Positions 10,711 through 60,830 of a stretch of DNA of 64,000 bases are shown one piece after another. The notes beneath the pieces were generated by a model, which saw only the letters and a program-made list of their open reading frames with translations, ran no database searches and had not been told where the DNA came from. Within the stretch, counting starts at the first letter, position 1. The number at the start of each line of letters is the position of its first letter. The DNA is taken from positions 265,801 to 329,800 of IMG/VR virus record IMGVR_UViG_3300028840_008160; one strand, written 5' to 3'. Both the position numbers and the translations under genes were made by a program.

Positions 10711-11630
10711 AATATAGCTTCTATTGCAGATTGTATGTAATTTAATTGAATATGATTACAATCTTCAGTAGGATGCTCTAGTGAAAAAAATGGTGCTTCA
10801 ATATCAAGCGGTTTTGTAAAGTTTGATCCGTATGAATATAGTACAACTGCAGGCTTACCTAAAGCAAATGCTAGATGAGAAAAATAACTATCTACTGTAA
10901 TTACAGCATCAGCCATATCAACAATAGCACTAACATTTCTTAATGTACCACATGCATGAGTACAAGGTAAATTAAATGGATCTGATTGATTAAGATAAAT
11001 GACATTATGATGTTTAATAAGTTCATAAATACTTCTAACTATTTTTTCGTTTAGAGACCGAATAGATACTGATGCTAATGGTGCAAAACAAATATTTTTC
11101 TTTTCATCTGATAAAAATGGTACTACACTAAAACATTCTTCGTCTACTACTTTGTATAAATATTTCCAGCTTGATGGATTAATGCCCATCATTGCAGCAA
11201 AGATTTTTGATGTAGGGCCGTCAATTAGTTTGCTGTATTTTTTACATAATGGTACAATTTCAGGATTGCTTTTACCGCCAGTTTTTTGTAATTGCGCGAA
11301 TTGATTCATAAATTCTACATAAGTGTTGCCAGGGTCGTGATGTGTACCGGTAAATCTATTTTTTGGGCCGATAATACCTCGCCAAATACATTCATCTTTT
11401 GTTGTTTCTGGTCGAATGTCTGTAAAATTGAGAACTACATCGTAGTGTTTGTGGAAGTTCATAGGTAGAACTTGAATAAAGCCAACATCAAACACGTTTT
11501 GCAATGGCTCTGGCGAACTAGTAAAGTCAAAGTGACAAGGGCCAATTTCTTCTTCTAATTTTTTAAAAATAGGAGAGAACCGAATACAATCACCAAGACC
11601 AAAATACGATAAAACGCAGACTTTTTTCAT
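10707..11630 (-). CDS. glycosyltransferase family 9 (heptosyltransferase-like)
   Basis: GLGDCIRFSP N-terminal motif; VITVDSYFSHLAFALGKPAVVL C-terminal motif; start at MKKVC assumed. Confidence 0.8.
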   Translation of the reverse strand: MKKVCVLSYFGLGDCIRFSPIFKKLEEEIGPCHFDFTSSPEPLQNVFDVGFIQVLPMNFHKHYDVVLNFTDIRPETTKDECIWRGIIGPKNRFTGTHHDPGNTYVEFMNQFAQLQKTGGKSNPEIVPLCKKYSKLIDGPTSKIFAAMMGINPSSWKYLYKVVDEECFSVVPFLSDEKKNICFAPLASVSIRSLNEKIVRSIYELIKHHNVIYLNQSDPFNLPCTHACGTLRNVSAIVDMADAVITVDSYFSHLAFALGKPAVVLYSYGSNFTKPLDIEAPFFSLEHPTEDCNHIQLNYIQSAIEAIL

Positions 11631-11653
11631 GACTATGCCTTTCGTCATGACTA
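11630..11653 (+). promoter_or_regulatory. TGACTA-box promoter candidate
   Basis: TGACTATG-CCTTTCGTCA-TGACTA. Confidence 0.5.
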
Positions 11654-11685
11654 TTTTTGTATATTCTCAGCATAGGATTTACAAG

Positions 11686-11910
11686 ATGATCTCAATTGAT
11701 AATGGACAAATCTGGAAAAATAATGAACATTTTGCAAAAGTCGAGATGAAATTAGCACCTAACTCTAGACATTTTCTTTTTCGAGTTGTCGTGTTTACGC
11801 ATCGATTAGATTTTGTTAAAGTAACAACATGGGTGAAGAAACAGATGTTAGAGCGATATTTGAAAAACGAAGATTATGAAGAAACTAACTATAAATTTGA
11901 TATGCATTGA
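11686..11910 (+). CDS. hypothetical protein
   Basis: SD AGGA before ATG 11686, in frame with track ORF. Confidence 0.55.
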   Translation: MISIDNGQIWKNNEHFAKVEMKLAPNSRHFLFRVVVFTHRLDFVKVTTWVKKQMLERYLKNEDYEETNYKFDMH

Positions 11911-12164
11911 AAAGCAAATTGATTACTACATAAAGGTTCAAAATGAGATTACTAAAGTTATCAAAGATATTTAGAGACAGATATAACTTAGCAAAAGTGT
12001 TCGGCATCTCTGTACAATTACATTATACTTTTGTTATGTTTTTACTGACAAACAATGGAAATGATGATGGCAATTCCTAAATTAGTTAAAAACATAAAAC
12101 CAAGAGAACGAGATGAAGCTATTATTTGGATTGATGGTCAACCTCAACGATGCAAGGTGCAAAA

Positions 12165-12374
12165 ATGCCAGCAGTCAAATGTTTAAGTTGTGGACGGATA
12201 ACAAATACGGCTGTTGCTGATTGGTTAGATTGCAAACAAAATTATCAAGATAATAAAACATCTCCAGAATTTGCAGACCGATGTTTTGCTGCTGTTGATA
12301 GCAAAAATAATGTATGGGTAAAAGGTTGTGCTTATGATGACGACGATAATTATAAAATGTCATTTGTGAATTAG
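12165..12374 (+). CDS. Cys-rich hypothetical protein (frame stays open 29 codons past its TAG)
   Basis: CLSCG...CFAA...GCAY; TAG 12372-12374 followed by ILGSSTLPKTREQMLQELEELTKNE. Confidence 0.55.
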   Translation: MPAVKCLSCGRITNTAVADWLDCKQNYQDNKTSPEFADRCFAAVDSKNNVWVKGCAYDDDDNYKMSFVN

Positions 12375-12444
12375 ATTTTAGGTAGTTCGACGTTGCCAAA
12401 AACGCGGGAACAAATGCTGCAAGAATTGGAAGAGTTAACAAAAA

Positions 12445-12828
12445 ATGAGAAAAAAGTTAAGTAGCTTTGTTGAGACATGCCGTCTAACTAAAGAAAATTG
12501 TAAAATTCCAGATTACAAGTTCATCAGCTCGAAAGATGATGGCAACAATGGTTTATTTATGTTTTCTTTGACTGATAAGAAGTCGGGTCAAAAACGATAT
12601 TTAAGATGTTTGGTTTGTGACGAGGGTGATTGGGATCATGTATCAATATCAGAAGAAACTAGTATGCCAACATGGGAAGAAATATTATTAGTTAAAAGAA
12701 TGTTTTTTGATGAGTCTGAAATTGTATTTCAGTTATATTCATCAGATTTTAAATATGACAACAATGTAATTCATTTGTGGAGGTCTCATAAACTCGATAT
12801 TCCTGTACCACCGAAGGATTATATATGA
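12445..12828 (+). CDS. conserved phage protein (WxHVS...PTWEE family)
   Basis: WDHVSIS...PTWEEILLVKRMFF...VIHLWR. Confidence 0.7.
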   Translation: MRKKLSSFVETCRLTKENCKIPDYKFISSKDDGNNGLFMFSLTDKKSGQKRYLRCLVCDEGDWDHVSISEETSMPTWEEILLVKRMFFDESEIVFQLYSSDFKYDNNVIHLWRSHKLDIPVPPKDYI

Positions 12829-13106
12829 ATGGGTTCAAAGTTAAATTAGTCGACGATCAACTTATTGTGGAACCAATGAATGAGCCAAATGATATTAATT
12901 GGGATAAGATCATTTGTTACGACGATATTGTACTGATTTATATTGAAGCTATAAATGTTAGTACTGCAAAACGTAAAGCTATGGAAAAAATCAGTAAATT
13001 TCTTCCATTGTTGGATAGATGTCAAGTTATGTTAGAAACAAAACCATTGGTTGGTGTAAAGATTGACGAATGTAAGAAACAACTTTTAAGAAAGGAAAAA
13101 CAGTAA
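12825..13106 (+). CDS. hypothetical protein
   Basis: ATGA-coupled 93 aa ORF. Confidence 0.6.
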   Translation: MNGFKVKLVDDQLIVEPMNEPNDINWDKIICYDDIVLIYIEAINVSTAKRKAMEKISKFLPLLDRCQVMLETKPLVGVKIDECKKQLLRKEKQ

Positions 13107-13297
13107 TGGATGCTTATCGGCGTGAACTTACGAAACATCGCACGCATGTAGCCGAAGACAAAAAGAAGAAGCAGGAAAAGATTGCACGAATTCGTGAGAC
13201 TTTACTCACGCACAAAGAAAAAAATGGAGATGTTCCATGTACACATGTTCATGGATATGCTCTCGATGAAGTTAACAATATCGTAAAGGTTGTTTAA
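13106..13297 (+). CDS. hypothetical protein
   Basis: TAATG-coupled 63 aa ORF. Confidence 0.55.
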   Translation: MDAYRRELTKHRTHVAEDKKKKQEKIARIRETLLTHKEKNGDVPCTHVHGYALDEVNNIVKVV

Positions 13298-13690
13298 ATG
13301 AGTTTGCCAGAAGTTATCAAAGGCAAAATGGTAATGGAAGTTAGTCCTCAGATACAAATTATTCTATTTCCAGATTATGAGGGTCAGCCGAAAATCGACG
13401 TTGTTCAGGTTGATTTTACTCAGCTTGAAGGTAAAAAGACATCGTTGTTTATGACACCATGCGAAGCATTAGAATTGTTATCGGCTCTTGCCACAGCTGT
13501 ACAATTTTATCTTTACAATCAAGAACAATACCGTAAAGAAATTCTTGAACCAAGAGAAGCGATAGTTGATTCAAGAATTATGTGTCGACGTATCAAATCA
13601 GAATGTCATCACAAAGATTTAAGTGCAAAGTATGAGTGCGAGAAAGAAGATCGCGAATGTGCTTTACGAAATAGTGTTGTAGAAGATTAA
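13298..13690 (+). CDS. hypothetical protein
   Basis: 130 aa ORF abutting previous stop. Confidence 0.6.
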   Translation: MSLPEVIKGKMVMEVSPQIQIILFPDYEGQPKIDVVQVDFTQLEGKKTSLFMTPCEALELLSALATAVQFYLYNQEQYRKEILEPREAIVDSRIMCRRIKSECHHKDLSAKYECEKEDRECALRNSVVED

Positions 13691-14031
13691 GTAGAAAATT
13701 CAACTTTAGTAGGATTATCTTGCAAATTTGATACAGAATCTTCTGATACAACGTATGCATCGTAATTAGTACTTTCTGCTAAATTGATTGCTGCACTATA
13801 AGCTTCAAAATTAGCCACTTGAATTGCTGCACCAGATAAACCAAATGCAACCGGTGTTCCGGTACTATCTTGACCATTTTTTACTTGCTGTGAAGTTGGA
13901 GCTGTGGCACTTCTGTCAACAATAACAAAAAATGTACAGCCGTTTTCGTTCGTTTGCGATGTAATGTCGACAGTTGTCGGTGTTCTATTTACAATTGACG
14001 GATATCCTGATTCATTTATTGGTTTTGTCAT
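13687..14031 (-). CDS. stand-alone FN3-like domain, paralog of the repeats in 7812..9620
   Basis: PINESGYP...TNENG...APTSQQVKNGQDSTGTPVA...YDAYVVSED...LQDNPTKVEFST aligns with both repeats; SD AAGGAG. Confidence 0.8.
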   Translation of the reverse strand: MTKPINESGYPSIVNRTPTTVDITSQTNENGCTFFVIVDRSATAPTSQQVKNGQDSTGTPVAFGLSGAAIQVANFEAYSAAINLAESTNYDAYVVSEDSVSNLQDNPTKVEFST

Positions 14032-14041
14032 CGATTACTCC

Positions 14042-14371
14042 TTAAAAAGCATTGTCTATATTTTCTAAAAAGTCTTGTTCGTGTGGATATATATTTAAAA
14101 TGTGTTGCATTCCTGTTAGATGAAAAGTGTCCATTATATCTTTATTTAACCCATATATGCATAAATTTACTTTTGTACTGTATTCTACTAACAATCCTAA
14201 TGCAGAACTGTCAATTGTATTTACACCAGTTAGATCTAGTACGATATTTGATCTGCCTTGTTTTATAATGGCTTGTAGTCTATCAGCAATGTTGTTAACT
14301 TCGCCATTAGTTATTGAACCTTGAATTGTCAGAACTAGATACATCTCATTTGACGATTCTTGAATCTGCAT
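14042..14371 (-). CDS. STAS-domain anti-sigma factor antagonist (RsbV/SpoIIAA-like)
   Basis: IVLDLTGVNTIDSSALGLLV...FHLTGM; SD AGGAGG before ATG 14371. Confidence 0.85.
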   Translation of the reverse strand: MQIQESSNEMYLVLTIQGSITNGEVNNIADRLQAIIKQGRSNIVLDLTGVNTIDSSALGLLVEYSTKVNLCIYGLNKDIMDTFHLTGMQHILNIYPHEQDFLENIDNAF

Positions 14372-14453
14372 ATTAAGCCTCCTATGGCCTTTTCTATAAT
14401 TAGCATCTTTATAAAACAACTTATTACAAGTAAAAAGAACTTAACCCATTCAT

Positions 14454-14680: not shown

Positions 14681-14704
14681 TTTCTTTGTCTTCATGAGTG
14701 ACTA
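14681..14704 (+). promoter_or_regulatory. TGACTA-box promoter candidate
   Basis: TTTCTTTG-TCTTCATGAG-TGACTA, ATG 7 nt downstream (14712). Confidence 0.65.
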
Positions 14705-14711
14705 TAAACTT

Positions 14712-14900
14712 ATGATGTGGTAGACTAGAGACGGAAGAGTAATGAATATCAAAGACATGGATGCGCAGCATTTGCATAATGTAATTGCTATGTTAGAGCG
14801 AGAAAAACGTCAACCAGATGTTATTGAAGAATTACGCAAAGAATTAGATAGTAGGCAATCTCAAGTGAACAAATTTTCGTTTATTTTAGATCACAATTAA
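14712..14900 (+). pseudogene. small conserved phage protein (WxTRDG...DM...HL.N.I.ML) with TAG at codon 4
   Basis: MMW*TRDGRVMNIKDMDAQHLHNVIAMLER; TAG 14721-14723 lies inside the motif. Confidence 0.6.
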
Positions 14901-17082: not shown

Positions 17083-18063
17083 ATGATTGATTTTTTTAAA
17101 CGACTAATTCAATATTTGCGAAATTTATTTTTGGCAAAACAAGCATTTTGGCCAGAGAGTACGTTTGACATTCTTAACAAGGAGAGTACCGTGAGATGTC
17201 CAAAACTGGGTTGGATGCGTGATCTTCCAGATATTAGAGACTATAGTGTTGATACGCCAAAAGTACAAGAAACGTTAAAGATGTATCCTCAATATGGTTC
17301 AACAATACCAGACACTGTTGATTTAAGACAATGGTGCTCTCCTATAGAAGATCAACAAGCTTTAGGTTCTTGCACAGCCAATGCTGCAGTTGGCGCAGTC
17401 GAGTTGTTACAAAGGGCATATTATGGTAATCATATTGATATGTCTAGATTATTTGTTTACAAAACTACAAGAAATCTTATGCAAAGAACAGGTGATACTG
17501 GTGCTACTATTCGTGGAACAATGAAAGCTCTTGCAATGTTTGGTTCGCCACCGGAGCAATATTGGGATTATGATATTCAAGATTTTGATCTTGAACCATC
17601 ACAATTTGCTTATGCAATGGGTCAAAACTACAAGGCAATTAGTTATTACAGATTAGATCCACAAATAAAAACCACAGAAGCTATGAGTCAAACAGTTCAG
17701 CGTATTCAACAACAACTAGCTTGGGGTATTCCTTGTGTGTTTGGTTTCATAGTTTTTTACTCAGTTCCAAGACCTGGTGATGGGAAAATTGATATTCCAA
17801 TGCCAACGCCCGGTGATTATCCAATGGGAGGTCATGCTGTACTAGCTGTTGGTTATGATAATAACCGTATGATGCCAACGACTACTCCTGGCAAATCTGT
17901 GAAAGGTGCGTTTCTTATTCGTAATTCGTGGGGAACTTCATGGGGTGATGGTGGATATGGCTGGTTGCCCTATTCATTTGTAAGGTCTGGTCTTGCAGTT
18001 GATTGGTGGGCACTTGCATATACTGATCATATTGATCTTTCACAATTTGACACCAGGAGATAA
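17083..18063 (+). CDS. papain-like cysteine peptidase (C1A)
   Basis: DLRQWCSPIEDQQALGSCTANA, GGHAVLAVGYD, IRNSWG: Q-C-H-N catalytic set intact. Confidence 0.9.
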   Translation: MIDFFKRLIQYLRNLFLAKQAFWPESTFDILNKESTVRCPKLGWMRDLPDIRDYSVDTPKVQETLKMYPQYGSTIPDTVDLRQWCSPIEDQQALGSCTANAAVGAVELLQRAYYGNHIDMSRLFVYKTTRNLMQRTGDTGATIRGTMKALAMFGSPPEQYWDYDIQDFDLEPSQFAYAMGQNYKAISYYRLDPQIKTTEAMSQTVQRIQQQLAWGIPCVFGFIVFYSVPRPGDGKIDIPMPTPGDYPMGGHAVLAVGYDNNRMMPTTTPGKSVKGAFLIRNSWGTSWGDGGYGWLPYSFVRSGLAVDWWALAYTDHIDLSQFDTRR

Positions 18064-18750: not shown

Positions 18751-18774
18751 CGTCTACGTTACTACAGTTGATTA
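18751..18774 (+). promoter_or_regulatory. TGACTA-box promoter candidate
   Basis: CGTCTACG-TTACTACAGT-TGATTA. Confidence 0.55.
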
Positions 18775-19313: not shown

Positions 19314-20019
19314 TGGCAGAAAACAAAGTGCTTGAAAAGTTGATCGACGCATTTGCTACGATAGAAAAGTATGATATAAGAGTTGCTCGAATAAATATGC
19401 CCTATCGTGCATATGATGAAATTGTAAAAGATCAAATATGTCGATTTGATTCATCTAGTCTTATATCAACACAACAATCAATAGCGTTAGATAATACTAG
19501 GACTGAAGCACGTATTGGTAATTTGTATGGTGCTGAAGTGTTCTTTTCTGACAAATTTGAAGTCTTTGGCGAACAAAATTTTGCGCCAGCAAGGGCAACA
19601 GATGTTATTATAGAAGTAATCGAATAAAATGTCCAGTACCATTGTACTCATTTATTGGCAATCTTACCATTTATGTTAAATCAAGAGCATTTCCAGTTTC
19701 AAATGTCAGTAAAGAAGAATCAATTGCAATAGAGATGTTACGAGAAATGATCACTGAAGCTGAATACCGTAAGTATATTAAAGATGGATTTATTTGTGTA
19801 AAAGGTGTAAGCGGCAAGATTTATCAAGTTTTTAGACATAACAACCATGTAAGAGTTTGGCATAATGGTAAATTAATTGAAGAAATTTGTTCATATATAT
19901 CTGATACAAGCGTGCCACCGACTGACAAAGTTGTCGCATTTAAAACTATTATTGAAACTGATGAAGAAGAATTTCGTTCACTTGGAAACGTTTACAAAAT
20001 GAGAAGCATGGCAGCATAA
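19310..20019 (+). pseudogene. split member of the LREMITE paralog family (ORFs 19310..19627 and 19642..20019)
   Basis: the two ORFs together align with single ORFs 25741..26403 and 36770..37489; the second lacks an SD/ATG; different frames. Confidence 0.55.
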
Positions 20020-23117: not shown

Positions 23118-23302
23118 TGTCATTACTTATTAAACCAACGCCAGTTCTTACTGGTGAAGATGCGCAGCGTTTTGCAAAGGCTATAGAAAATCCAAAGCCT
23201 GTGTTAAAAGAAGAGTATCTTCGTGCCAAGAAGACGTATGAAGCTGTGGTACGAAAGCATAGTCAATTTTCTATAGAAAATGACTTGACTACTCTTCAAT
23301 GA
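23117..23302 (+). CDS. small protein resembling DUF1778/antitoxin C-terminal segment
   Basis: IKPTPVLTGEDAQRFAKAIENP. Confidence 0.4.
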   Translation: MSLLIKPTPVLTGEDAQRFAKAIENPKPVLKEEYLRAKKTYEAVVRKHSQFSIENDLTTLQ

Positions 23303-25422: not shown

Positions 25423-25753
25423 TGATGGCAAAATTGTTGTTATTTCGCAACCGACCCATGTGACAATTTCGTGGTACGTTGGTAGTGGTTTTGTTGAAAG
25501 AGCAACGGTAAGCGCAGATTTAGTGGATCAATGGTGGATTAATAGAGTGTTAGTTCAACCAGAAAGTAATCGTGGGCTTGGCATTGGAAGTCATTTACTT
25601 AAAATGTTGAAAGAAGAAGTCAAAAAACAAGGTGGAACAAAAATAGTTGTGGCACCTGGTGGATATGATCAAAATAAGGATCGTCAAGTTAGATTTTACA
25701 AAAAACATAATTTTATTGAATATGAGCAAGGGAGTTATATTTGTTTTCTGTGA
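25412..25753 (+). CDS. GNAT-family acetyltransferase
   Basis: INRVLVQPESNRGLGIGSHLL acetyl-CoA loop; RFYKKHNF. Confidence 0.8.
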   Translation: MKIDDGKIVVISQPTHVTISWYVGSGFVERATVSADLVDQWWINRVLVQPESNRGLGIGSHLLKMLKEEVKKQGGTKIVVAPGGYDQNKDRQVRFYKKHNFIEYEQGSYICFL

Positions 25754-26403
25754 TTTCCGACCCAAAGAGTAAATTTATTGCTCAAAAGATTGTAAAAACA
25801 GTTAATGACTGCAGATTAAGAAATTTGCCGGCAGAAAAGATTGTATTGACAAAAAAAGTGTTCAATGATTTGAGTCATGATGAAGACTATTTTGCTGGCT
25901 TTGACATATCTGACAATCAAGAATATCTTTTTGGTGTGAATGTTTGCGTTGTTAGCGACGGTAGGTGTCAAGTAATTGCACCAACACAGTTTGGACGACA
26001 AACATTCGACATACAGTGTAGCAAAAAAGACTTTTTCGTTCATACTATACGGCAAAATCTTTATGTTCGTACTATATCTCGATCAGGGGCAGTAAGTAAT
26101 GTATCACCGGCTGAAGAACGAGCAATTGAGCTTCTTCGAGAGATGATTACAGAAGCAGAATTTCGAAGATACCTTAAATATGGTTTCATTCTTGTTCAGG
26201 CACAAAGTAGTCGAATATATCAAGTGTTTAGAGAAGCAAGACACATAAAAGTTTGGCTGAATGGTAAATGTATTGAAGAAATTTGCGTGCGATTGAACGA
26301 ACTGCCTCAAACTGATTACGTAGTGGCTTTCAAAGTTATGATTGAGACAGATGAAATTGAGTTCAGACAATTAGGAAATTTATATAGGTTGGCAGCTTCA
26401 TGA
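25741..26403 (+). CDS. LREMITE paralog family protein
   Basis: AIELLREMITEAEFRRYLKYGF...IEEIC...TDYVVAFKVMIETDEIEFRQLGN shared with 19642 and 36770. Confidence 0.75.
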   Translation: MFSVISDPKSKFIAQKIVKTVNDCRLRNLPAEKIVLTKKVFNDLSHDEDYFAGFDISDNQEYLFGVNVCVVSDGRCQVIAPTQFGRQTFDIQCSKKDFFVHTIRQNLYVRTISRSGAVSNVSPAEERAIELLREMITEAEFRRYLKYGFILVQAQSSRIYQVFREARHIKVWLNGKCIEEICVRLNELPQTDYVVAFKVMIETDEIEFRQLGNLYRLAAS

Positions 26404-28013: not shown

Positions 28014-29663
28014 ATGTATAATGAACCGAAAGCAGATTGCAGTTTAACAGCAGGATACAGATCTTTAGTAGTTAATCCTAAGAATCCTCTATATCATCTG
28101 TTTAATTTTATTGCAAAAGAATATGCAAATGATACAGAGAAATTATTGAAACATTTTACAGGTTTACTTGCGCTAAGTATAGATACGGGTGTGATTAAGA
28201 ATAAAAATTTGCGTGTTGCTGTTAAATTTTTGAAATTTGGAGTAACTGGTTCAATTTTTGGATCTGAATTTATAATGCACATTCGCAATTATATTCATGA
28301 TCAGAAAAGTATGAAAGCTGATCCATTCAAAAAACGTATGATAAAAGCTTCAAAACTGCTCGAAATAAAAGAAGAAGATGCAATGTATGCTAATTTACCT
28401 CACGCTGAAGTAAATATGAGTACAGAATTTGCTATGTGGTTCGTGAATAGACCTCAAACATACAAAGTCAGAATCAAGGGTTATTACAATATGCAATCTC
28501 TTGAAGAAATAACAAAAGAATTAGAATTTGAACCAGGTCGAACTACAGAAGTTGCAATCATATTTGAAATAAACAAAGAATTTTTTATATGGGACCTTGT
28601 TTTTAAGACTGGTATTTTAGGAATATCAGGAGTATCATCATCATATTTTGTAGGCAAGATGATAAATGAAGATAAAGTTAATGACATTCGAAAGGCTATG
28701 TTGTTTGATTTTGCTCAAAGCTTAAACTATAAAGAAAATACTATTTGGTTTGATGGTTGGGGAGGATTATATTCTAAACCGCGCCGCGTTGTTTTGGAAC
28801 AAATTAATCAGTTTGACACAACAAGACTTATTACTGAAATTGAAGCAGTACTCGAACATGGACGAAAACGAGCTTTTGCTTTTGTCGGCAAACAAGGCGT
28901 GGGAAAATCGTCAATTCTTAGATTAATTGAACAGAGATTAACAAAATATATGATTATACATCTTACGCCAGATGATTTTGAATATGCGTCTCGCATTCGA
29001 GATAGATTTGAAGTTACAAAACTTTTTCAACCATTAGTACTTATGATTGAAGATTTAGATGCTTGTGGTTTAAAAGAGAAAAAGAAAACTACTGGAGCGT
29101 TTCTTGATTGTATTGATGAAGTTAATAAAGATTTGAATATAGTTATTTTAGTATCAATTAATGACACTGCATTGGTTCACCGCACAATTATCAATCGACC
29201 TGGGCGGTTCGATCGTGTGTTTGAAATTTTTCCGCCTAAAACAATTGATGAAGCATTATATGTAGTCAAATCAAAAATAAATGCAATCCAATCAAATTAT
29301 TGTGAACAAATGCAACCGAAATTGTTTGCTGACGATCCGACAAACATAAATAAAGTACTAGACAGATGTATTAAACAAGGATTTACGCAAGCTGAATTAA
29401 CAAATGCAATTGCAGAACAAGCACTTATAGAAATTGGTATTGATTTAAAATGTGGTTTGTTAGCCAAAACGTGGAATGATATTACTCATATTGAATTTGA
29501 ATCATATCTTGATAAAGCTGTAGATAGTCATATAGCTACAAGGACTGCTATCAAAAACTGCAATTTTCATGATACTGACCCTGATGACGATGACGAAGCC
29601 AAATGCGTAGACAAGCAGGCGTCTCCTGGTTATGGGGCAGTAGAAGCTATGTCTTCTAGTTAA
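28014..29663 (+). CDS. AAA+ ATPase
   Basis: Walker A GKQGVGKS, Walker B LMIEDLD, second region of homology INRPGRFDR. Confidence 0.9.
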   Translation: MYNEPKADCSLTAGYRSLVVNPKNPLYHLFNFIAKEYANDTEKLLKHFTGLLALSIDTGVIKNKNLRVAVKFLKFGVTGSIFGSEFIMHIRNYIHDQKSMKADPFKKRMIKASKLLEIKEEDAMYANLPHAEVNMSTEFAMWFVNRPQTYKVRIKGYYNMQSLEEITKELEFEPGRTTEVAIIFEINKEFFIWDLVFKTGILGISGVSSSYFVGKMINEDKVNDIRKAMLFDFAQSLNYKENTIWFDGWGGLYSKPRRVVLEQINQFDTTRLITEIEAVLEHGRKRAFAFVGKQGVGKSSILRLIEQRLTKYMIIHLTPDDFEYASRIRDRFEVTKLFQPLVLMIEDLDACGLKEKKKTTGAFLDCIDEVNKDLNIVILVSINDTALVHRTIINRPGRFDRVFEIFPPKTIDEALYVVKSKINAIQSNYCEQMQPKLFADDPTNINKVLDRCIKQGFTQAELTNAIAEQALIEIGIDLKCGLLAKTWNDITHIEFESYLDKAVDSHIATRTAIKNCNFHDTDPDDDDEAKCVDKQASPGYGAVEAMSSS

Positions 29664-29685
29664 TCTACGTTTTTAGATATGACTA
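29662..29685 (+). promoter_or_regulatory. TGACTA-box promoter candidate
   Basis: AATCTACG-TTTTTAGATA-TGACTA, ATG 7 nt downstream (29693). Confidence 0.65.
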
Positions 29686-29692
29686 CTCTAAC

Positions 29693-29986
29693 ATGTCTGT
29701 TGTACCTAATTACATTGAATTCACTAATGAAGAGCTTGTTGATTTAAGTTATCGACTTCAAAATTCAAATTCAATTCATGCTAAACAACTTGCCAAAAAG
29801 ATTGATCGTTCGATAGGTCAATTTACTACGACAAATCTCCTTGGTTCACTAAATTCTTCATTTGAAGATCGTATTTGTAAAGATTTGATTTTTTTCATGT
29901 CGATAAACGACGTGGCAAAAATTGATGATAAAGAACCGTTTAAAACAATAGCATTGTGGAGATTACATTTAGGGAGACAACGTTGA
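29693..29986 (+). CDS. hypothetical protein, predicted leaderless
   Basis: no SD; ATG 7 nt after box. Confidence 0.6.
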   Translation: MSVVPNYIEFTNEELVDLSYRLQNSNSIHAKQLAKKIDRSIGQFTTTNLLGSLNSSFEDRICKDLIFFMSINDVAKIDDKEPFKTIALWRLHLGRQR

Positions 29987-31241: not shown

Positions 31242-31378
31242 TTTCGCCATTGAGAAGCTTTATTTTCGTGCACTGAGAAGGTATTACTTCTTTTCGCCAC
31301 TGAGAAGCCTTATTTTCGCCTCTGAGAAGGTATTACTTCTTTTCGCCACTGAGAAGCCTTATTTTCGCCTCTGAGAAG
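31242..31378. repeat. six-copy direct repeat array (iteron-like)
   Basis: core TTTCGCC[AT][CT]TGAGAAG (copy 2 TTTCGTGCACTGAGAAG) ending at 31257, 31280, 31307, 31329, 31356, 31378; spacing 23/27/22/27/22. Confidence 0.9.
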
Positions 31379-36737: not shown

Positions 36738-36761
36738 TTTCTATGTTCTGTCGCATGACTA
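36738..36761 (+). promoter_or_regulatory. TGACTA-box promoter candidate
   Basis: TTTCTATG-TTCTGTCGCA-TGACTA, ATG 8 nt downstream; CATGACT-ATATA-AGTCATG palindrome. Confidence 0.65.
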
Positions 36762-36769
36762 TATAAGTC

Positions 36770-37489
36770 ATGAATATGACAGATCAAATCAGACACGTAG
36801 CAAGATTGCCGCAACGACTTCTTCGTGAACGAGCAATGATTGCAGAGCTTGCTGCAAAGACAGTCCATGTAACAATTCGTGACTTTAAAGCGAAGAATGC
36901 TCCTCCCCCACAAAGTCTAAGTATTTCTCCAGTACTTTCAAGACATCTTAGAAAAGACCCACAACTCGGTTTTCGTGAAAAACCGACGTTTATGGGCATA
37001 CTTATCAAAGTTGATGAAAATCTACGGGAAGGTGAAATTAGACTTAGCTCAGTTGATACATCACGACAACTTAGATACACAGCAAGTTCGATAATTTCAC
37101 CTTATCTTTTTTCAATATTTGGTAATGATTGTTACAATATTGTTATCAAAACTAGAGGCCATCCTGTTAATTTTCACAGCGCCGGACCGGAGCAAACAGC
37201 GCTTGAAATGTTACGAGAAATGATCACTGAAAAAGAGTTTTTTAAGTACCTTAAGTATGGCTTTCTTATTGTTGAAGGTAAAAGTGGTAAACAGTATCAA
37301 GTTTTCAGACTAAATGCACACACAAAAGTTTGGATGAGAGGTAAACTCGTCGAAGAAATTTGTGTAAGAATAAACAATAAAGCAGACGTACCACCAACTG
37401 ACAATGTGATTGCGTTCAAAGTCATGATTGAAAGTAATGAAGATGAATTCAGACGGATAGGAAACGTTTATAGAATGAAGGTTGCATGA
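36770..37489 (+). CDS. LREMITE paralog family protein
   Basis: ALEMLREMITEKEFFKYLKYGF...VEEIC...PPTDNVIAFKVMIESNEDEFRRIGN. Confidence 0.75.
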   Translation: MNMTDQIRHVARLPQRLLRERAMIAELAAKTVHVTIRDFKAKNAPPPQSLSISPVLSRHLRKDPQLGFREKPTFMGILIKVDENLREGEIRLSSVDTSRQLRYTASSIISPYLFSIFGNDCYNIVIKTRGHPVNFHSAGPEQTALEMLREMITEKEFFKYLKYGFLIVEGKSGKQYQVFRLNAHTKVWMRGKLVEEICVRINNKADVPPTDNVIAFKVMIESNEDEFRRIGNVYRMKVA

Positions 37490-41068: not shown

Positions 41069-41110
41069 AAAAGCTACTCATCTTCCTTATTTGAGTAGCT
41101 TTTTCTTTTG
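41069..41110 (+). terminator. intrinsic terminator
   Basis: AAAAGCTACTCA-N11-TGAGTAGCTTTT then TCTTTT. Confidence 0.75.
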
Positions 41111-41158: not shown

Positions 41159-41182
41159 TTTCTTTGTCTTCTTGAATGACTA
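41159..41182 (+). promoter_or_regulatory. TGACTA-box promoter candidate
   Basis: TTTCTTTG-TCTTCTTGAA-TGACTA; nearly identical to 14681-14704. Confidence 0.65.
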
Positions 41183-44813: not shown

Positions 44814-44841
44814 ATGGCCGGATTTTCCGGCCATTTTTTTT
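44814..44841 (+). terminator. intrinsic terminator
   Basis: ATGGCCGG-ATTTT-CCGGCCAT then T run. Confidence 0.9.
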
Positions 44842-44843: not shown

Positions 44844-44867
44844 TAACTACGACAATTAGATTGATTA
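44844..44867 (+). promoter_or_regulatory. TGACTA-box promoter candidate
   Basis: TAACTACG-ACAATTAGAT-TGATTA, ATG 7 nt downstream (44875). Confidence 0.6.
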
Positions 44868-44874
44868 CTCTTCT

Positions 44875-45066
44875 ATGACATCAAAAGATGAATATGTAAA
44901 AGCAGCTGAAACTCGAATTGTCCAAACTGCAAAGCAAATTGGCGCAGAAATTCCTGCGTTTGTAAGAACTGCAATTTTGGTCGAGCTTAAAACTTTATAT
45001 GACATTGGACAAAGATCTGTTTCTGAAAGGAACGATTCAGATGCTACAACCTCTTCGATTGAATGA
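44875..45066 (+). CDS. hypothetical protein, predicted leaderless
   Basis: no SD; ATG 7 nt after box. Confidence 0.55.
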   Translation: MTSKDEYVKAAETRIVQTAKQIGAEIPAFVRTAILVELKTLYDIGQRSVSERNDSDATTSSIE

Positions 45067-45772: not shown

Positions 45773-46783
45773 ATGCAGAAAACGCATTTTGAACGATTTA
45801 AATCGTCACCATTTTGGTATTTGTTTGAAGATCAATTCAAACAATGCGAAATGTTTGACACTAATAAATATCCAATTTCTGAAGTTGCACTTTACAAAGT
45901 GTTTGCTCAAAATAGCACTAATTCATCACTTGATCTCTCATTAGCGATGCATTTATATCATGCATGGAAAGATGGTAATTTTTATGAGCTTACACCTGCT
46001 TTATGCGATGTTTTAACAAAAACTGAATATAGAGATGTTGACACACGATTTATTAGAGTGCCAGAAAGGTCAATGTATTTATCATTACCGAAAGGCAATG
46101 GTCTTGTTGTTCCTTGTAATCAAACAGGGCGATTACACAATGCTGAAGGTATTTATCTAACTTTTCTTGAATTTGAACAGCCATCAACAATTCTTCTAGG
46201 TAAACAACATCGCGAGATAAAAGATGTTATTAAACATATCTCAGTTATGGTTGTTGGTGAAGAAATTGGTTTGCATAATGATGCATTAATCTATTTTAAT
46301 TTATGTTTTTGGCAAGGCAAAGTTAGTGATTCGATTGAAAAGAATATCGAAATGACCATAGGTTTCAATAATGATATTTTAGTATACATACGACAAGCAT
46401 TTAATTTGATTGCTAAAGTTTTACTTTACATTGAATGTTCAAACACTGTGTTAAAGCAGATTGCTGGTGTTGATATAAATTCAATATTGGCGAAGAAAAA
46501 GAATAAATCAAAAATCAGGAAACAATTCAAAAAACTGGATAGACTATCTGTACTATTACACAAACAAATTGATGTAACAACAATAAATAAACATTCTTCT
46601 AGCTCGTCATCTGGGGTTGAGACTGGTAGAAAAGTATTATTAGAATCTGTAGCTCCGCATTTTAAAATGCAACATTTTGGTCCACAAAACACTTTAGTAA
46701 AAATTATTCATGTAGATGGTTATGAACGAGGTGAACTTGCAGGACAAATCAAATCAACAAAGAAAAAACATCTTATCAAATAA
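45773..46783 (+). CDS. conserved phage hypothetical protein (start uncertain)
   Basis: RVPERSMYLSLP...VAPHFKMQHFGP...KIIHVDGYERG. Confidence 0.65.
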   Translation: MQKTHFERFKSSPFWYLFEDQFKQCEMFDTNKYPISEVALYKVFAQNSTNSSLDLSLAMHLYHAWKDGNFYELTPALCDVLTKTEYRDVDTRFIRVPERSMYLSLPKGNGLVVPCNQTGRLHNAEGIYLTFLEFEQPSTILLGKQHREIKDVIKHISVMVVGEEIGLHNDALIYFNLCFWQGKVSDSIEKNIEMTIGFNNDILVYIRQAFNLIAKVLLYIECSNTVLKQIAGVDINSILAKKKNKSKIRKQFKKLDRLSVLLHKQIDVTTINKHSSSSSSGVETGRKVLLESVAPHFKMQHFGPQNTLVKIIHVDGYERGELAGQIKSTKKKHLIK

Positions 46784-46812
46784 TCTATGTAAATTCATTT
46801 GATTACTTTATC

Positions 46813-46965
46813 AGGTTGCTAAACTCGGACAGTATTGCTGTCCTCTTACATAGTAACCTTACACTTATCAACAGCTTTTGAACTTAAGCTGGTAAGCTGT
46901 GAGGAAAATTATGCAAGAGGGCAGCATTTCTTTTGCCCTCATTCAATTCATTTAAGAGGAGGGCA
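46813..46965 (+). other. multi-hairpin intergenic element with alternative pairings
   Basis: AGGTTGCTA/TAGTAACCT enclosing GGACAG/CTGTCC; ACAGCTT with AAGCTG or AAGCTGT; TGCCCTC with either of two GAGGGCA. Confidence 0.45.
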
Positions 46966-50601: not shown

Positions 50602-50625
50602 AATCTTCGTAATACTGCATGATCT
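50602..50625 (+). promoter_or_regulatory. TGACTA-box promoter candidate (variant)
   Basis: AATCTTCG-TAATACTGCA-TGATCT, ATG 7 nt downstream (50633). Confidence 0.5.
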
Positions 50626-50632
50626 ATACTAC

Positions 50633-50827
50633 ATGACTACATGGGATGATTTTCGACAAGTTTGTGTACATGGAATTCGCGAAGAGCTTGATTCTCATGA
50701 CTGTCTACTATGTCAAGAAATAGCAAGGAAAGCTGGCCTAGATTGTTCAAACGGTAAGACTTACATTTTTACTTCGCAAAAACAAATCGACGAATATCTA
50801 GGAGCATCGAAACAGGTAGACAAATGA
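50633..50827 (+). CDS. hypothetical protein, predicted leaderless
   Basis: no SD; ATG 7 nt after box. Confidence 0.55.
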   Translation: MTTWDDFRQVCVHGIREELDSHDCLLCQEIARKAGLDCSNGKTYIFTSQKQIDEYLGASKQVDK

Positions 50828-52330: not shown

Positions 52331-52354
52331 ATTCTACGCTCACCAGCATGACTA
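52331..52354 (+). promoter_or_regulatory. TGACTA-box promoter candidate
   Basis: ATTCTACG-CTCACCAGCA-TGACTA, ATG 7 nt downstream (52362). Confidence 0.65.
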
Positions 52355-52361
52355 TTAGTAC

Positions 52362-52595
52362 ATGCTGAAATCCTTTGAATTATTGAAAAAGCATCGTGAT
52401 ATTGAGCCGTTCAAAGTTGAATTTTTGAACGGTTTGAACGTTGTAGTGGGCGATAATGGATTTGGCAAATCGACCATGCTGCAAATGATAACTGCTAATC
52501 ATATTGAATTCAAGAAAGGTCAAACGATCTTCAAATGCAAAAGCGACGGTAACAATCGTTATGTCTTCTTTATGGGAAGCTTTTGTTGCTATTGA
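52362..52595 (+). pseudogene. truncated ABC/SMC-type ATPase N-terminus
   Basis: VEF..GLNVVVGDNGFGKSTML Walker A; no Walker B or signature before the stop. Confidence 0.65.
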
Positions 52596-58484: not shown

Positions 58485-58485
58485 C

Positions 58486-58509
58486 TTTCTTTGTTTCTGC
58501 GCATGACTA
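58486..58509 (+). promoter_or_regulatory. TGACTA-box promoter candidate
   Basis: TTTCTTTG-TTTCTGCGCA-TGACTA, ATG of uvsE 7 nt downstream. Confidence 0.7.
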
Positions 58510-58516
58510 TTCTTAC

Positions 58517-59383
58517 ATGAAATATGGTTATGCGTGTATTAACACAGTTCTACGCGAACAGAAAATTTTTGCTAGCAGAGGAATGACGCAAAAGACTTTT
58601 CTTACAAAAGGCCTTCAATATGCGTCTATGTTAGCATTGCAAAATGCCAAAGATTTATTGACTATTCTTCAATGGAATCAAAATCATAGCATATTCTTTT
58701 ATCGCATGTCATCTGGCATATTTCCCTGGATGTCAGAATATGAATTGCAAGATCTTCCAAATTTTGACGATATTAAATCAATTCTCCAACAAATAGGTTC
58801 ATTTGCTAAAACTCATCACCACAGACTTACATTTCATCCCGGTCAATTTAATGCATTAGCATCGCCAAAAGACATCGTCGTTCGCAAAACAATAAAAGAA
58901 CTGGAACAACATGCTCAAATAATGGATTTGATAGGCCTACCTCGATCACCACAAGCAAAAATCAACATTCATGTAGGCGGCACATATGACAGCAAATTGT
59001 CAACTCTTAATCGTTGGTGTAATGTTTTTTATGATCTCAGTCAATCAGTTCGTTCTCGACTTACATTAGAAAATGATGACAAACCTAATGGCTACACAAC
59101 AAACGATTTATTATGGGCTCACGAGCTAACAAACATTCCTATCACATTCGACTCGCATCATCATACATGCAATGGTCAATCTTCTCACAAACAAGCTATG
59201 AAACTAGCATTCAAAACGTGGCCAAAACATGTAACGCCAGTAATTCATGTGTCGTCGCATCGACCCGGATCATCAATACAAGCACATGACGACTTTGTAC
59301 AATCATTCGATACATTCAATATGAATGTTGATGTCATGTTTGAAGCAAAACAAAAAGAACAGGCTGTTTTACGACATCTATGA
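58517..59383 (+). CDS. uvsE: UV damage endonuclease
   Basis: MKYGYACIN start, FYRMSS..FP, TFHPGQF..LAS, INIHVGG, LTLENDDK, FDSHHH, HVSS, MFEAKQKE. Confidence 0.92.
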   Translation: MKYGYACINTVLREQKIFASRGMTQKTFLTKGLQYASMLALQNAKDLLTILQWNQNHSIFFYRMSSGIFPWMSEYELQDLPNFDDIKSILQQIGSFAKTHHHRLTFHPGQFNALASPKDIVVRKTIKELEQHAQIMDLIGLPRSPQAKINIHVGGTYDSKLSTLNRWCNVFYDLSQSVRSRLTLENDDKPNGYTTNDLLWAHELTNIPITFDSHHHTCNGQSSHKQAMKLAFKTWPKHVTPVIHVSSHRPGSSIQAHDDFVQSFDTFNMNVDVMFEAKQKEQAVLRHL

Positions 59384-59393
59384 AAGGTTAATC

Positions 59394-60098
59394 ATGGAAA
59401 CACTAACTTTAGGTCCAAGTGACTTACTACACACGTCAAGATTTGTGGCAGCCAGCTACCCAGAAAAACGCAAAAGGATTTCATTTAACGACTTCAACAA
59501 TGAAGCAAAGGCTGCTATAGAACGAGCATATCAATCAAACTGCGTAATTAGATATGTTGACAGGGACTTTGAAAAAATCATTCCAAATCCAAACTTCAAA
59601 CCACTAGCTGATGACCTCTGGGCGCTATTTGAATCTTTCATACCAATAAGACAAAAAATAGATGTTGCAACTAAAATGTGCAACATTCTTTCATCACATG
59701 ATGTCAATCTTCGACCATCAGAAATTGCTTTCGACTTATCAGACGCAATCTTACCTGAAAAAATTATAGACTCTGAAAAGTTTCGAGCTACTATAAAACG
59801 TAGACGATCAACTACCGATCAAGAAATTGACAACAGAGAACGCGAAGTTATAGAAGGCAGAAAACAGTTTTTTCATTTGAATGACCCAGATGAGCATGTT
59901 ACATGGGACATCAAAGAATTCAAAGAATTTGCTTTGGAGAATCCATTACCTTCTGACAATCCAACGTGCGCATTTGTTGGCTACCTAAACAAAACAGGCA
60001 ACAAACGACTTTATTTGCCTCTTGAAGAAATTAGTGATGAAGATTTTTATTCACTTCCTGCACGTTCCTGTTTAAGTAAAACTGGAGTTTCTAAATGA
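59394..60098 (+). CDS. hypothetical protein
   Basis: SD AAGG before ATG 59394, in frame with track ORF. Confidence 0.6.
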   Translation: METLTLGPSDLLHTSRFVAASYPEKRKRISFNDFNNEAKAAIERAYQSNCVIRYVDRDFEKIIPNPNFKPLADDLWALFESFIPIRQKIDVATKMCNILSSHDVNLRPSEIAFDLSDAILPEKIIDSEKFRATIKRRRSTTDQEIDNREREVIEGRKQFFHLNDPDEHVTWDIKEFKEFALENPLPSDNPTCAFVGYLNKTGNKRLYLPLEEISDEDFYSLPARSCLSKTGVSK

Positions 60099-60134
60099 CA
60101 ATAAGTTATAAAATTGCAAAACATAAAGGGATAA

Positions 60135-60647
60135 ATGATGAGAACTAGAATCATCTCAGCTTTTCCCGGCACTGGCAAATCTCACTATCATAATCTACAC
60201 TTTGACACAACTCTTGATTCTGATTCGTCACAATTTTCATGGCTGTCAACAAACGATAATGGTAAAACAAATGCTAGCCGACAAAACGGACAAAGAAATC
60301 CAAACTTTCCACAAAACTACATCGACCACATAAAAGAAAACATCGGCAAATATGAAATCATATTCGTATCAACTCATAAGGTCGTAAGAGATGCTCTTCT
60401 AGACAACTGCATCTTCTTCTATCTCATATATCCCAATCATCATATGAAAGACAAGTTCTTACGCCGTTACAGTGACAGAGGTGACGAAAGCATGTTCGTC
60501 AAACATCTTAGTGATAACTGGGATGCTTGGCTCAAAGAACTATCATTTTGCGACACTGGCTGCAAACAAATACAAATGATATTCCCATACATCGATAAAG
60601 AAATCCAGAATATCATTGCTTCTGAACACGGTGATATGCTTGATTAA
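60135..60647 (+). CDS. P-loop kinase-like phage protein
   Basis: IISAFPGTGKS; DSDSSQFSW; FPQNYIDHI. Confidence 0.65.
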   Translation: MMRTRIISAFPGTGKSHYHNLHFDTTLDSDSSQFSWLSTNDNGKTNASRQNGQRNPNFPQNYIDHIKENIGKYEIIFVSTHKVVRDALLDNCIFFYLIYPNHHMKDKFLRRYSDRGDESMFVKHLSDNWDAWLKELSFCDTGCKQIQMIFPYIDKEIQNIIASEHGDMLD

Positions 60648-60675
60648 TCTACGACTATAACACACATAACTCTAC

Positions 60676-60725
60676 CAGTGACGAAGTTGCGAAGTCTGCA
60701 TCCGCGGCCCTGCGCGGCGACACTG
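60676..60725. other. GC-rich structured element
   Basis: 33 of 50 nt are G/C; CAGTG..CACTG outer stem, CCGCG/CGCGG inner hairpin. Confidence 0.5.
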
Positions 60726-60727
60726 CG

Positions 60728-60769
60728 TTTGTCACTTGGCCCCCTTCCTTTGTCACTTGGCCCCCTTCC
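60728..60769. repeat. perfect 21-nt tandem duplication
   Basis: TTTGTCACTTGGCCCCCTTCC x2. Confidence 0.9.
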
Positions 60770-60791
60770 TCTACGTCTCCCGTCATGACTA
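60768..60791 (+). promoter_or_regulatory. TGACTA-box promoter candidate
   Basis: CCTCTACG-TCTCCCGTCA-TGACTA, ATG 7 nt downstream (60799). Confidence 0.6.
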
Positions 60792-60830
60792 ATTACTCAT
60801 GATATTAAGCACACAAAGATTGGAGCACGA

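What the first reader, a model, noticed from the sequence alone, without database searches (positions are those of the whole stretch)
11630..60799. Non-sigma70 promoter box with start codons at the predicted transcription start (leaderless regulon)
Seen: an 8-mer resembling [TA]TCT[AT][CT]G, exactly 10 nt, then TGA[CT]TA, at 11630, 14681, 18751, 29662, 36738, 41159, 44844, 50602 (TGATCT), 52331, 58486, 60768, all intergenic or at gene ends. In eight cases an ATG with no Shine-Dalgarno follows after 7 nt (14712, 29693, 44875, 50633, 52362, 58517, 60799) or 8 nt (36770). The uvsE start is independently supported by the family N-terminus MKYGYACIN. The other three lead into SD-bearing or more distant genes. 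Inference: the hexamer is a -13..-8 element and the upstream box lies at -31..-24, recognised by a phage sigma factor or phage RNA polymerase, producing leaderless mRNAs that could escape a shut-off of SD-dependent host translation.
Basis: partly seen in the sequence, partly recalled or inferred. Interest (0 to 1): 0.78.

Follow-up and report, generated by a model that had tools for sequence, protein, structure and literature searches.

The report
Phage promoter motif abutting start codons
An uncultured 330-kb marine phage carries at least 14 copies of a two-part DNA signal that looks like a phage-specific promoter. In about half the copies it sits so close to the gene's ATG that the messenger RNA would have no leader, but no RNA data exist to prove where transcription starts.

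Summary
TCTWYG-N10-TGAYTA occurs 7 times in its strict form against 0.12 expected. It occurs only at N10 spacing and only on the gene strand. All 11 reported sites hold. I added 23268, 46782 and one site 3.9 kb past the window end.

ATG follows the hexamer by 7 nt at eight sites and by 8 nt at one. Seven of these ATGs open real ORFs of 63-288 aa, including UvdE and an RNA-ligase-like protein. Independent gene callers start six of the seven genes at these ATGs. The ATGs at 14712 and 60799 open only 3- and 11-codon ORFs.

A relative with about 70% nucleotide identity keeps the boxes and spacing at orthologous junctions while the spacers diverge. One ortholog keeps the ATG at +7. Two others carry a short leader with GGAGG or AAGGAG instead.

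Best reading: a lineage-specific promoter, with a box at -29..-24, a hexamer at -13..-8 and Y(-1)A(+1). It gives leaderless first cistrons at about half the sites. The polymerase or factor that reads it is unidentified, and no sigma or RNAP gene is recognisable in the window.

The "escape from an SD shut-off" idea is not supported, because downstream cistrons in the same operons use strong SDs. Thermus phage phiYS40 is a precedent for leaderless phage mRNAs. No RNA run was listed, so the start sites remain inferred.

The parts
11630..11653 (+). Motif site 1. Weak box TGACTATG, hexamer TGACTA. It lies in the divergent gap between the - strand gene ending at 11630 and the + gene 11686-11910. Leadered, about 25 nt.
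14681..14714 (+). Motif site 2. The ATG 7 nt after the hexamer (14712) opens only a 3-codon ORF. The real gene is 14742-14900, followed by phrog_1383 and phrog_2087 genes.
18751..18774 (+). Motif site 3 (CGTCTACG / TGATTA). Leadered: the next gene starts at 18870.
23268..23301 (+). Motif site 4, new (box TTTCTATA). ATG 23299, 7 nt after the hexamer, is the called start of the RNA-ligase-like gene (204 aa).
29662..29695 (+). Motif site 5. The box overlaps the stop of the AAA ATPase gene. ATG 29693, 7 nt after the hexamer, is the called start of a 97-aa gene. Boxes, spacing and ATG are conserved in the relative.
36738..36778 (+). Motif site 6. ATG 36770 is 8 nt after the hexamer, and a second in-frame ATG lies at 36776 (called start, 237 aa). 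The relative's ortholog has a 20-nt gap containing GGAGG instead.
41070..41102 (+). Hairpin of 11 pairs followed by a T-rich run, after gene 39110-41041. Terminator-like, just upstream of site 7.
41159..41182 (+). Motif site 7. Leadered: an SD (AAGGA) precedes ATG 41219. The site is conserved in the relative, which is also leadered.
44814..44834 (+). Intrinsic-terminator-like hairpin (9 pairs plus a T run), 10 nt upstream of site 8.
44844..44877 (+). Motif site 8 (TAACTACG / TGATTA). ATG 44875, 7 nt after the hexamer, is the called start of a 63-aa gene.
46782..46805 (+). Motif site 9, new (AATCTATG / TGATTA). It leads into a structured 134-nt RNA (46812-46945), then the SD-led gene at 46968.
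50602..50635 (+). Motif site 10 (hexamer TGATCT). ATG 50633, 7 nt after the hexamer, is the called start of a 64-aa gene.
52331..52364 (+). Motif site 11. ATG 52362, 7 nt after the hexamer, is the called start of a 77-aa ORF with a P-loop (AAA_23/AAA_15 N-terminus).
58486..58519 (+). Motif site 12. ATG 58517, 7 nt after the hexamer, is the called start of UvdE (288 aa; Pfam profile position 1 aligns to residue 3).
60723..60764 (+). Two tandem 21-nt G+C-rich direct repeats ending 3 nt before the box of site 13. Possibly a regulator site.
60768..60801 (+). Motif site 13. ATG 60799, 7 nt after the hexamer, opens only an 11-codon ORF. The next called genes start at 60831 and 60925.

Best explanation
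The motif is the core promoter of a transcription class specific to this phage lineage. Its consensus is wwTCTWYGt, 9-10 variable nt, TGAYTA, 6 variable nt, a pyrimidine, then A. Taking that A as +1, the hexamer lies at -13..-8, where a multisubunit RNA polymerase begins to melt DNA, and the upstream box lies at -29..-24.

At least 14 such promoters head rightward operons across a 56-kb module. The module is bounded by a divergent junction (11.6 kb) and a convergent junction (3.9 kb beyond the window end). Its genes cover nucleotide metabolism, repair, anti-defence and many unknown functions.

At seven sites the +1 A is the A of the first gene's ATG, so the first cistron would be translated from a leaderless mRNA. 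At the other sites the same promoter feeds a short leader with a normal Shine-Dalgarno sequence, a tiny ORF, or a structured RNA.

What is shown: the enrichment, spacing, strand bias, position, conservation and gene starts.

My estimates: about 0.8 that it is a promoter; about 0.6 that the start coincides with the ATG; about 0.5 that specificity is phage-encoded rather than due to a host alternative sigma.
For: - Enrichment, exact N10 spacing and restriction to the gene strand.
- Every site lies at a gene boundary, whereas non-coding DNA is only about 9% of the window. TGACTA is about 6 times denser in non-coding DNA than in coding DNA.
- Terminator-like hairpins sit directly upstream of sites 41159 and 44844.
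- Nine of 14 sites have ATG 7-8 nt after the hexamer. Seven of these open ORFs of at least 63 codons, whereas only 20% of + strand ATGs do. Independent gene callers start six of the genes there.
- UvdE and the RNA ligase align to their families from the N-terminus.
- A relative at about 70% nucleotide identity has 9 sites in about 50 kb. At three orthologous junctions the boxes and spacing are kept while the spacers and flanks diverge. The 97/98-aa orthologs align from Met1.
- The same promoter precedes SD-led leaders in the orthologs of sites 36738 and 41159. The motif is therefore independent of the start codon.
- The base 7 nt after the hexamer is A in 15 of the 20 sites tabulated and in all 3 later sites of the relative. 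It is usually preceded by a pyrimidine, and this holds at 8 of the 12 sites with no ATG at that position.
- The motif-linked ATGs have no SD, while 37 of 90 ORF starts do, against 5.8% background.
Against: - No RNA data exist, so no transcription start has been observed.
- No sigma, RNAP, MotA-like or AsiA-like gene is recognisable in the roughly 90 kb of this genome that I read.
- One perfect site (L066:16170) points into convergent genes, and two ATGs open only mini-ORFs.
- At 36738 the conserved start is the second ATG.
- The ATG distance varies from 6 to 9 nt in the relative.
- A 10-bp gap between the two elements fits no characterised sigma-70-family holoenzyme.
- The motif's distribution over the other ~270 kb of the genome is known only for the strictest pattern and one 21-kb sample.
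Confidence: 0.62

Rival explanations
1. It is a promoter, but it is read by host RNA polymerase with a host alternative sigma factor, or by the unknown host's own unusual promoter logic. The phage would only trigger that factor, for example through its STAS-domain protein that resembles an anti-sigma antagonist.
For: No phage sigma or RNAP was found in the DNA read. The phage encodes a STAS-domain protein (E 2.6e-17) and an alpha-CTD-like protein. The host is unknown.
Against: More distant relatives (AAA ATPase at 52% identity or less) lack the motif. No other IMG/VR contig carries more than one strict copy. The 10-bp spacer fits none of the sigma-family geometries I compared it with, from memory. 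Sigma-70-like TTGACA/TAnnnT pairs also occur in other intergenic gaps, so the host appears conventional.
Confidence: 0.15
2. It is an operator, that is, a binding site for a phage repressor or activator placed next to promoters. It is not itself the element that positions RNA polymerase.
For: Two short boxes at a fixed spacing are typical of DNA-binding regulators. Site 60768 has extra direct repeats immediately upstream, which suggests layered control.
Against: The two boxes are neither a dyad nor a direct repeat. The orientation is strictly that of the genes. Only 7 nt separate the hexamer from the ATG, so no separate -10 element fits downstream, and no other conserved element lies upstream. 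The Y-A dinucleotide at a fixed distance suggests start-site selection.
Confidence: 0.12
3. It acts in RNA. UGAYUA 7 nt before AUG would be a non-SD ribosome-binding or reinitiation signal on longer polycistronic transcripts.
For: The 7-nt distance equals a typical SD-to-start spacing. Several sites directly follow an upstream gene with no terminator between them (29662, 50602, 23268).
Against: Five window sites and most sites in the relative lie 20-180 nt from the next start, or have their own SD. The ortholog of site 36738 kept the motif but gained GGAGG. The invariant upstream box at a rigid 10-nt distance has no role in this model. The hexamer pairs poorly with the 16S 3' end (my own pairing by hand, from memory of the E. 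coli-type tail).
Confidence: 0.07
4. It is a repeated mobile or recombination cassette, or a chance pattern.
For: Terminator-plus-promoter cassettes that repeat between genes are known in T4-type phages (PeSL elements; from memory). Two sites here have that layout.
Against: Only the two boxes are shared; the spacers and flanks are unrelated, so these are not copies of one element. Chance is excluded.
Confidence: 0.03

Closest known systems
Middle/late promoters of Thermus phages phiYS40 (and P23-45), which give leaderless mRNAs
   Same: A phage-specific temporal promoter class sits directly before start codons, so many phage mRNAs lack a leader. phiYS40 is reported to favour their translation by raising IF2 and lowering IF3 (PMC3594737).
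   Different: Those promoters are -10-type elements read by host sigma-A holoenzyme in a phylum where leaderless genes are common (PMC12340547; details from memory). Here the element is bipartite, unlike TAnnnT, and the phage relies on strong SDs for most genes.
T4 middle promoters (MotA box at -30 plus a sigma-70 -10 element; sigma appropriation by MotA/AsiA)
   Same: The geometry matches: an upstream box centred near -27 to -30 replaces a -35 element and lies 10-13 bp from the downstream element (T4 values from memory; PMC2988021 was listed but not read).
   Different: The box sequence differs (TCTWYG against TGCTT). The downstream hexamer is not a sigma-70 -10. No MotA or AsiA homolog was seen in the DNA read. 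T4 middle mRNAs are leadered.
Late promoters of jumbo-phage non-virion RNAPs (AR9: AACA-N6-T-A/G; phiKZ: TATG)
   Same: A short conserved element ends at -8, followed by 6 variable nt and a pyrimidine-purine start. AR9's AACA-N6-TA/G has the same layout as TGAYTA-N6-Y-A.
   Different: Those promoters have no upstream box. AR9 leaders are 26-491 nt, and phiKZ showed no leaderless transcript. No split beta/beta' genes and no DFDGD-type motif were found here.
Sigma-54 (-24/-12) promoters
   Same: Two elements lie near -24 and -12 rather than -35 and -10.
   Different: The consensus TGGCAC-N5-TTGC is absent. The centre-to-centre distance is 16 bp, not 10. No enhancer-binding-protein context is visible.

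Membership tests
Sigma-70-type promoter (-35 TTGACA, 17+/-1 bp, -10 TATAAT) | Two hexamers resembling TTGACA and TATAAT | tested here: not met
   The consensus is TCTWYG and TGAYTA. TGACTA shares only its first T with TATAAT.
Sigma-70-type promoter (-35 TTGACA, 17+/-1 bp, -10 TATAAT) | Spacer of 16-18 bp between the hexamers | tested here: not met
   The spacer is exactly 10 bp at all sites, with no enrichment at any other spacing from N5 to N16.
Sigma-54 promoter | GG at -24 and GC at -12 within TGGCAC-N5-TTGC | tested here: not met
   Column counts show G at -24 but YG rather than GG, and TGA rather than TTGC.
T7-like single-subunit RNAP promoter | One contiguous conserved block of about 20 nt, from -17 to +6 | tested here: not met
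   The conservation is bipartite and reaches -29 to -31. Positions -23 to -14 are variable.
Leaderless mRNA genes | A promoter element at a fixed short distance from the start codon, with no room for an SD | tested here: met
   There are 7-8 nt between the hexamer and the ATG at nine sites, and none has an SD.
Leaderless mRNA genes | The ATG is the true start of a coding gene | tested here: met
   This holds for seven of nine ATGs: ORFs of 63-288 aa, starts chosen by independent gene callers, Pfam N-terminal alignments, and an ortholog aligned from Met1. It does not hold for 14712 and 60799.
Leaderless mRNA genes | The primary 5' end of the transcript lies at the A of AUG | not testable with these tools
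   No RNA run was listed for this DNA.
T4 middle promoter / sigma appropriation | MotA-type activator and AsiA-type co-activator encoded by the phage | tested here: inconclusive
   None was seen among Pfam or PHROG hits for the window, its 5.9-kb extension and L070. About 245 kb of the genome was not read.
Jumbo-phage multisubunit RNAP promoters (phiKZ/AR9 type) | Split beta/beta' RNAP genes in the genome | tested here: inconclusive
   No DFDGD-type motif occurs in any ORF of at least 150 aa in the DNA read. The large unknown proteins gave no significant PDB sequence hits. The rest of the genome was not read.

The most novel reading that the evidence does not exclude
The motif is read by a so far undescribed phage-encoded specificity system: a sigma-like factor, an activator that remodels host RNAP, or a phage RNAP. 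Its two DNA contacts lie near -27 and -10, only 10 bp apart, and its start site is tuned to the A of AUG. One promoter type would then deliver both leaderless first cistrons and SD-led operons in a jumbo phage of an SD-using host.
Probability: 0.3. Interest if true: 0.7.

Novelty: new variant of a known kind. Interest (0 to 1): 0.5.

Why it matters
Transcription programmes of uncultured jumbo phages are almost unknown. A clean promoter consensus supported by comparison with a relative gives operon boundaries for a 56-kb module of mostly unannotated genes. It also corrects gene starts, because gene finders tuned to SDs can miss or misplace leaderless starts. And it provides a concrete bait for finding the cognate factor, for example by DNA pull-down or co-variation across relatives. 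If the starts are truly leaderless, this would extend the phiYS40-type strategy from Thermus to a mesophilic, SD-using host. It would also raise the question of how efficient 70S-type initiation is achieved there.

Tried and rejected
- Megablast and tblastn of window pieces against GenBank phages found no close relative. Only distant jumbo-phage hits appeared (Tenacibaculum pT24/PTm1, Lak, an uncultured 595-kb phage).
- tRNA and Rfam scans found nothing.
- The sigma-70 consensus scan was not enriched over shuffles.
- In the IMG/VR scan with the strict motif plus CATG, only the window's own contig had more than one hit. The other 59 loci look like chance.
- A metagenome scan with the AAA ATPase found only the same phage.
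- Relatives with AAA ATPase at 52% identity or less (L075-L077) have no motif.
- Run searches of kind 'any' and 'rna' listed only DNA runs.
- PDB sequence searches with three large unknown proteins gave nothing significant.
- A search for the RNAP catalytic motif found nothing relevant.
- A host guess from SmpB was ambiguous: Bacillota and Desulfobacterota at 52-60% identity.
- A Bacteroidota-type promoter or host was considered and rejected, because SDs are strongly used.
- An archaeal TATA-box reading was rejected. The box position fits, but the phage carries SmpB, RNase Y, SLT, an alpha-CTD-like protein and a heptosyltransferase, all of which are bacterial.
- Taking TAnnnT, starting at the TA of the hexamer, as a -10 element was rejected. 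It would place the start downstream of ATGs that are real start codons.

Full report
SOURCE. The window is the last 64 kb of IMG/VR contig IMGVR_UViG_3300028840_008160 (329.8 kb). This contig is a trimmed copy of JGI contig Ga0309773_1000036 (335,667 bp). Nearly identical DNA occurs in sediment and seawater metagenomes. The DNA is 35% G+C and almost all genes lie on the + strand. No close relative exists among GenBank phages. Two neighbouring genes (phrog_1383 and phrog_2087) link it distantly to jumbo phages. The host is bacterial and uses Shine-Dalgarno sequences: AGGA/GGAG/GAGG lies 4-18 nt before 37 of 90 naive ORF starts, against 5.8% of random windows. The phage also carries SmpB, RNase Y, a lytic transglycosylase and an RNAP alpha-CTD-like protein.

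OBSERVATION. The strict pattern occurs 7 times, all on the + strand, against 0.12 expected. With looser cores, the + strand has 9-13 hits at N10 and 0-2 at any other spacing from N5 to N16, and the - strand has 0-2. All 11 reported sites are real. A weight matrix added 23268 and 46782, and one more site 3.9 kb past the window end at L066:16170. Aligning 20 sites gives: an invariant C with near-invariant T, T and G in the box TCTWYG; an invariant TGA with near-invariant YTA in the hexamer; and little information in the 10-nt spacer or upstream of the box. Every site lies in an intergenic gap or on the last bases of the upstream gene, whereas non-coding DNA is about 9% of the window. The sites are spaced 1.7-7.2 kb apart, which is operon scale. 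They run from a divergent junction at 11.6 kb to a convergent junction 3.9 kb beyond the window end.

THE ATGs. ATG follows the hexamer by 7 nt at 14681, 23268, 29662, 44844, 50602, 52331, 58486 and 60768, and by 8 nt at 36738. One search's printed gap is one too large, an off-by-one of mine. Of the 8 occurrences of TGAYTA-N7-ATG on the + strand, 7 carry the box. Seven of the nine ATGs open ORFs of 63-288 codons, while only 20% of all + strand ATGs do so. Gene callers used by JGI, ENA and Logan start genes exactly at 23299, 29693, 44875, 50633, 52362 and 58517. UvdE aligns to Pfam from residue 3 and the RNA-ligase-like protein from residue 17. At 36738 the caller and the relative's Met1 favour the second ATG, 36776. 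The ATGs at 14712 and 60799 open ORFs of only 3 and 11 codons. None of the nine ATGs has an SD. The leadered sites (41159, 46782) and the downstream cistrons of the same operons (for example 30210, 51136, 52652, 53035) have strong ones.

COMPARATIVE EVIDENCE. A protein search found one close relative, Logan contig SRR22808017_9935 (107.8 kb). It is syntenic with about 70% nucleotide identity in genes. In about 50 kb of it, the matrix finds nine good sites, all on the gene strand. At three orthologous junctions the two boxes and the N10 spacing are kept while the spacers and flanks diverge.
- The ortholog of site 29662 keeps the ATG 7 nt after the hexamer, and the 97/98-aa proteins align from Met1 at 56% identity.
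- The orthologs of sites 36738 and 41159 have the same promoter followed by short leaders with GGAGG or AAGGAG.
- Two further sites in the relative have an ATG at 7 or 9 nt that is a called gene start. One has ATG-TGA at 6 nt.
The motif is therefore selected independently of the start codon, and the leaderless arrangement is gained and lost between relatives. More distant relatives (AAA ATPase at 52% identity or less) have no motif. No other IMG/VR contig has more than one strict copy.

WHERE TRANSCRIPTION WOULD START. The base 7 nt after the hexamer is A in 15 of the 20 sites tabulated and in all 3 later sites of the relative. It is usually preceded by C or T. This holds at 8 of the 12 sites with no ATG at that position. 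A pyrimidine-purine start 7 nt after the downstream element is what multisubunit RNAPs prefer (established knowledge). With that A as +1, the hexamer lies at -13..-8 and the box at -29..-24. Terminator-like hairpins lie just upstream of sites 41159 and 44844.

WHAT READS IT. This is unknown. The hexamers and the 10-bp spacer exclude a standard sigma-70 promoter, a sigma-54 promoter and a T7-type promoter. Sigma-70-like TTGACA/TAnnnT pairs occur in other intergenic gaps, so this is probably a second promoter class. No sigma, RNAP, MotA or AsiA homolog is recognisable in the window, in the 5.9 kb that follow it, or in a further 21 kb of the genome. About 245 kb of the genome could not be read. 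That 21-kb sample (L070) has only degenerate candidate sites, such as TTGCTACG-N10-TGACTA before an SD-led gene. The strictest pattern (motif plus CATG) occurs in the 330-kb contig only inside the window.

COMPARISON WITH KNOWN SYSTEMS. The nearest functional precedent is Thermus phage phiYS40. Most of its middle/late mRNAs are leaderless, and it appears to shift IF2 and IF3 levels in their favour. The nearest geometric precedents are two. T4 MotA-dependent middle promoters have a box near -30 (from memory). The AR9 late promoter AACA-N6-TA/G has the same layout as TGAYTA-N6-Y-A, but AR9 and phiKZ have no leaderless transcripts.

The promoter and leaderless parts are plausible and now better supported. 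Escape from a shut-off of SD-dependent translation is not supported, because most genes of the same operons depend on SDs.

VERDICT. This is a real, conserved, lineage-specific promoter-like element. Leaderless first cistrons are likely at about half the sites. The transcription start and the cognate factor are unproven. No RNA run was listed, so the decisive test could not be run.

Noticed in passing
window 44155-44589 (+): The phage encodes a full-length SmpB, the partner protein of tmRNA (Pfam E 3e-57). Its best bacterial matches are Bacillota and Desulfobacterota at 52-60% identity. No tmRNA gene lies in the window. The relative has it too.
   Followed up: partly
window 26400-26870 (+); relative L068:7880-8434: A small protein with an N-terminal RNAP alpha-subunit C-terminal-domain-like fold (Pfam 23.6 bits against a 23.8 cutoff; Atlas structural hits to alpha-CTD families, some of them fused to Sigma70_r4 or HTH domains). 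In the relative it sits directly behind a motif site. It is a candidate RNAP modulator or DNA adaptor.
   Followed up: partly
window 14042-14371 (-): A STAS-domain protein resembling an anti-sigma-factor antagonist (E 2.6e-17), on one of the few - strand genes inside the module. Its neighbour 13687-14031 looks like an Fn3-type beta-sandwich, not an anti-sigma kinase.
   Followed up: partly
window 46812-46945 (+): A strongly structured 134-nt RNA follows motif site 46782: a long hairpin of -48.7 kcal/mol (z -5.4) ending in a T-rich run. A second hairpin after it could mask the SD of gene 46968. There is no Rfam match. It may be an sRNA or a regulatory leader.
   Followed up: partly
window 60723-60764 (+): Two tandem 21-nt G+C-rich direct repeats, unique in the window, end 3 nt before the box of site 60768. 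They may be a regulator binding site.
   Followed up: partly
window 31242-31370 (+): An array of 22-27-nt direct repeats (TTTCGCCACTGAGAAG...), including a perfect 49-nt tandem duplication, lies in the gap before the 726-aa gene.
   Followed up: no
window 14712-14723, 60799-60834; relative rel30642: Mini-ORFs of 3 and 11 codons, and a bare start-stop in the relative, begin at the predicted +1 of motif sites that feed SD-led genes. They may be leaderless upstream ORFs, or the polymerase may prefer to start with AUG.
   Followed up: partly
L066:16170-16193 (3.9 kb beyond the window end): A perfect motif copy sits at the convergent junction that ends the rightward module. It overlaps an inverted repeat and points into - strand genes, which include a protein with Ig-like repeats. 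It may be an antisense promoter or a relic.
   Followed up: partly
window 36776-37489, 25741-26403, 19642-20019; L070:10001-10909: A paralogous family shares a C-terminal domain of about 110 aa that is about 60% identical to more than 100 proteins on large metagenomic contigs. It has no Pfam match and its function is unknown.
   Followed up: partly
L070 (another 21 kb of the same genome): Gene content that is unusual for a phage: type IB topoisomerase, RNase Y-like, PARP catalytic and regulatory domains, YEATS domain, staphylococcal-nuclease-like. In the window itself: two papain-family proteases (17083-18063, 33817-34653), an AcrVA2-like protein (45773-46783), ThyX and an NMNAT/CoaE fusion.
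   Followed up: no
L065 / L066 end (JGI contig position 335,667): Two independent assemblies (JGI and ENA) break at exactly the same base. This suggests a physical genome end or a terminal repeat.
   Followed up: no
window 52362-52595 (+): A 77-aa ORF holds only the P-loop N-terminus of an AAA_23/SMC-type ATPase and then stops. It may be a truncated or split gene that still has its own motif site.
   Followed up: no
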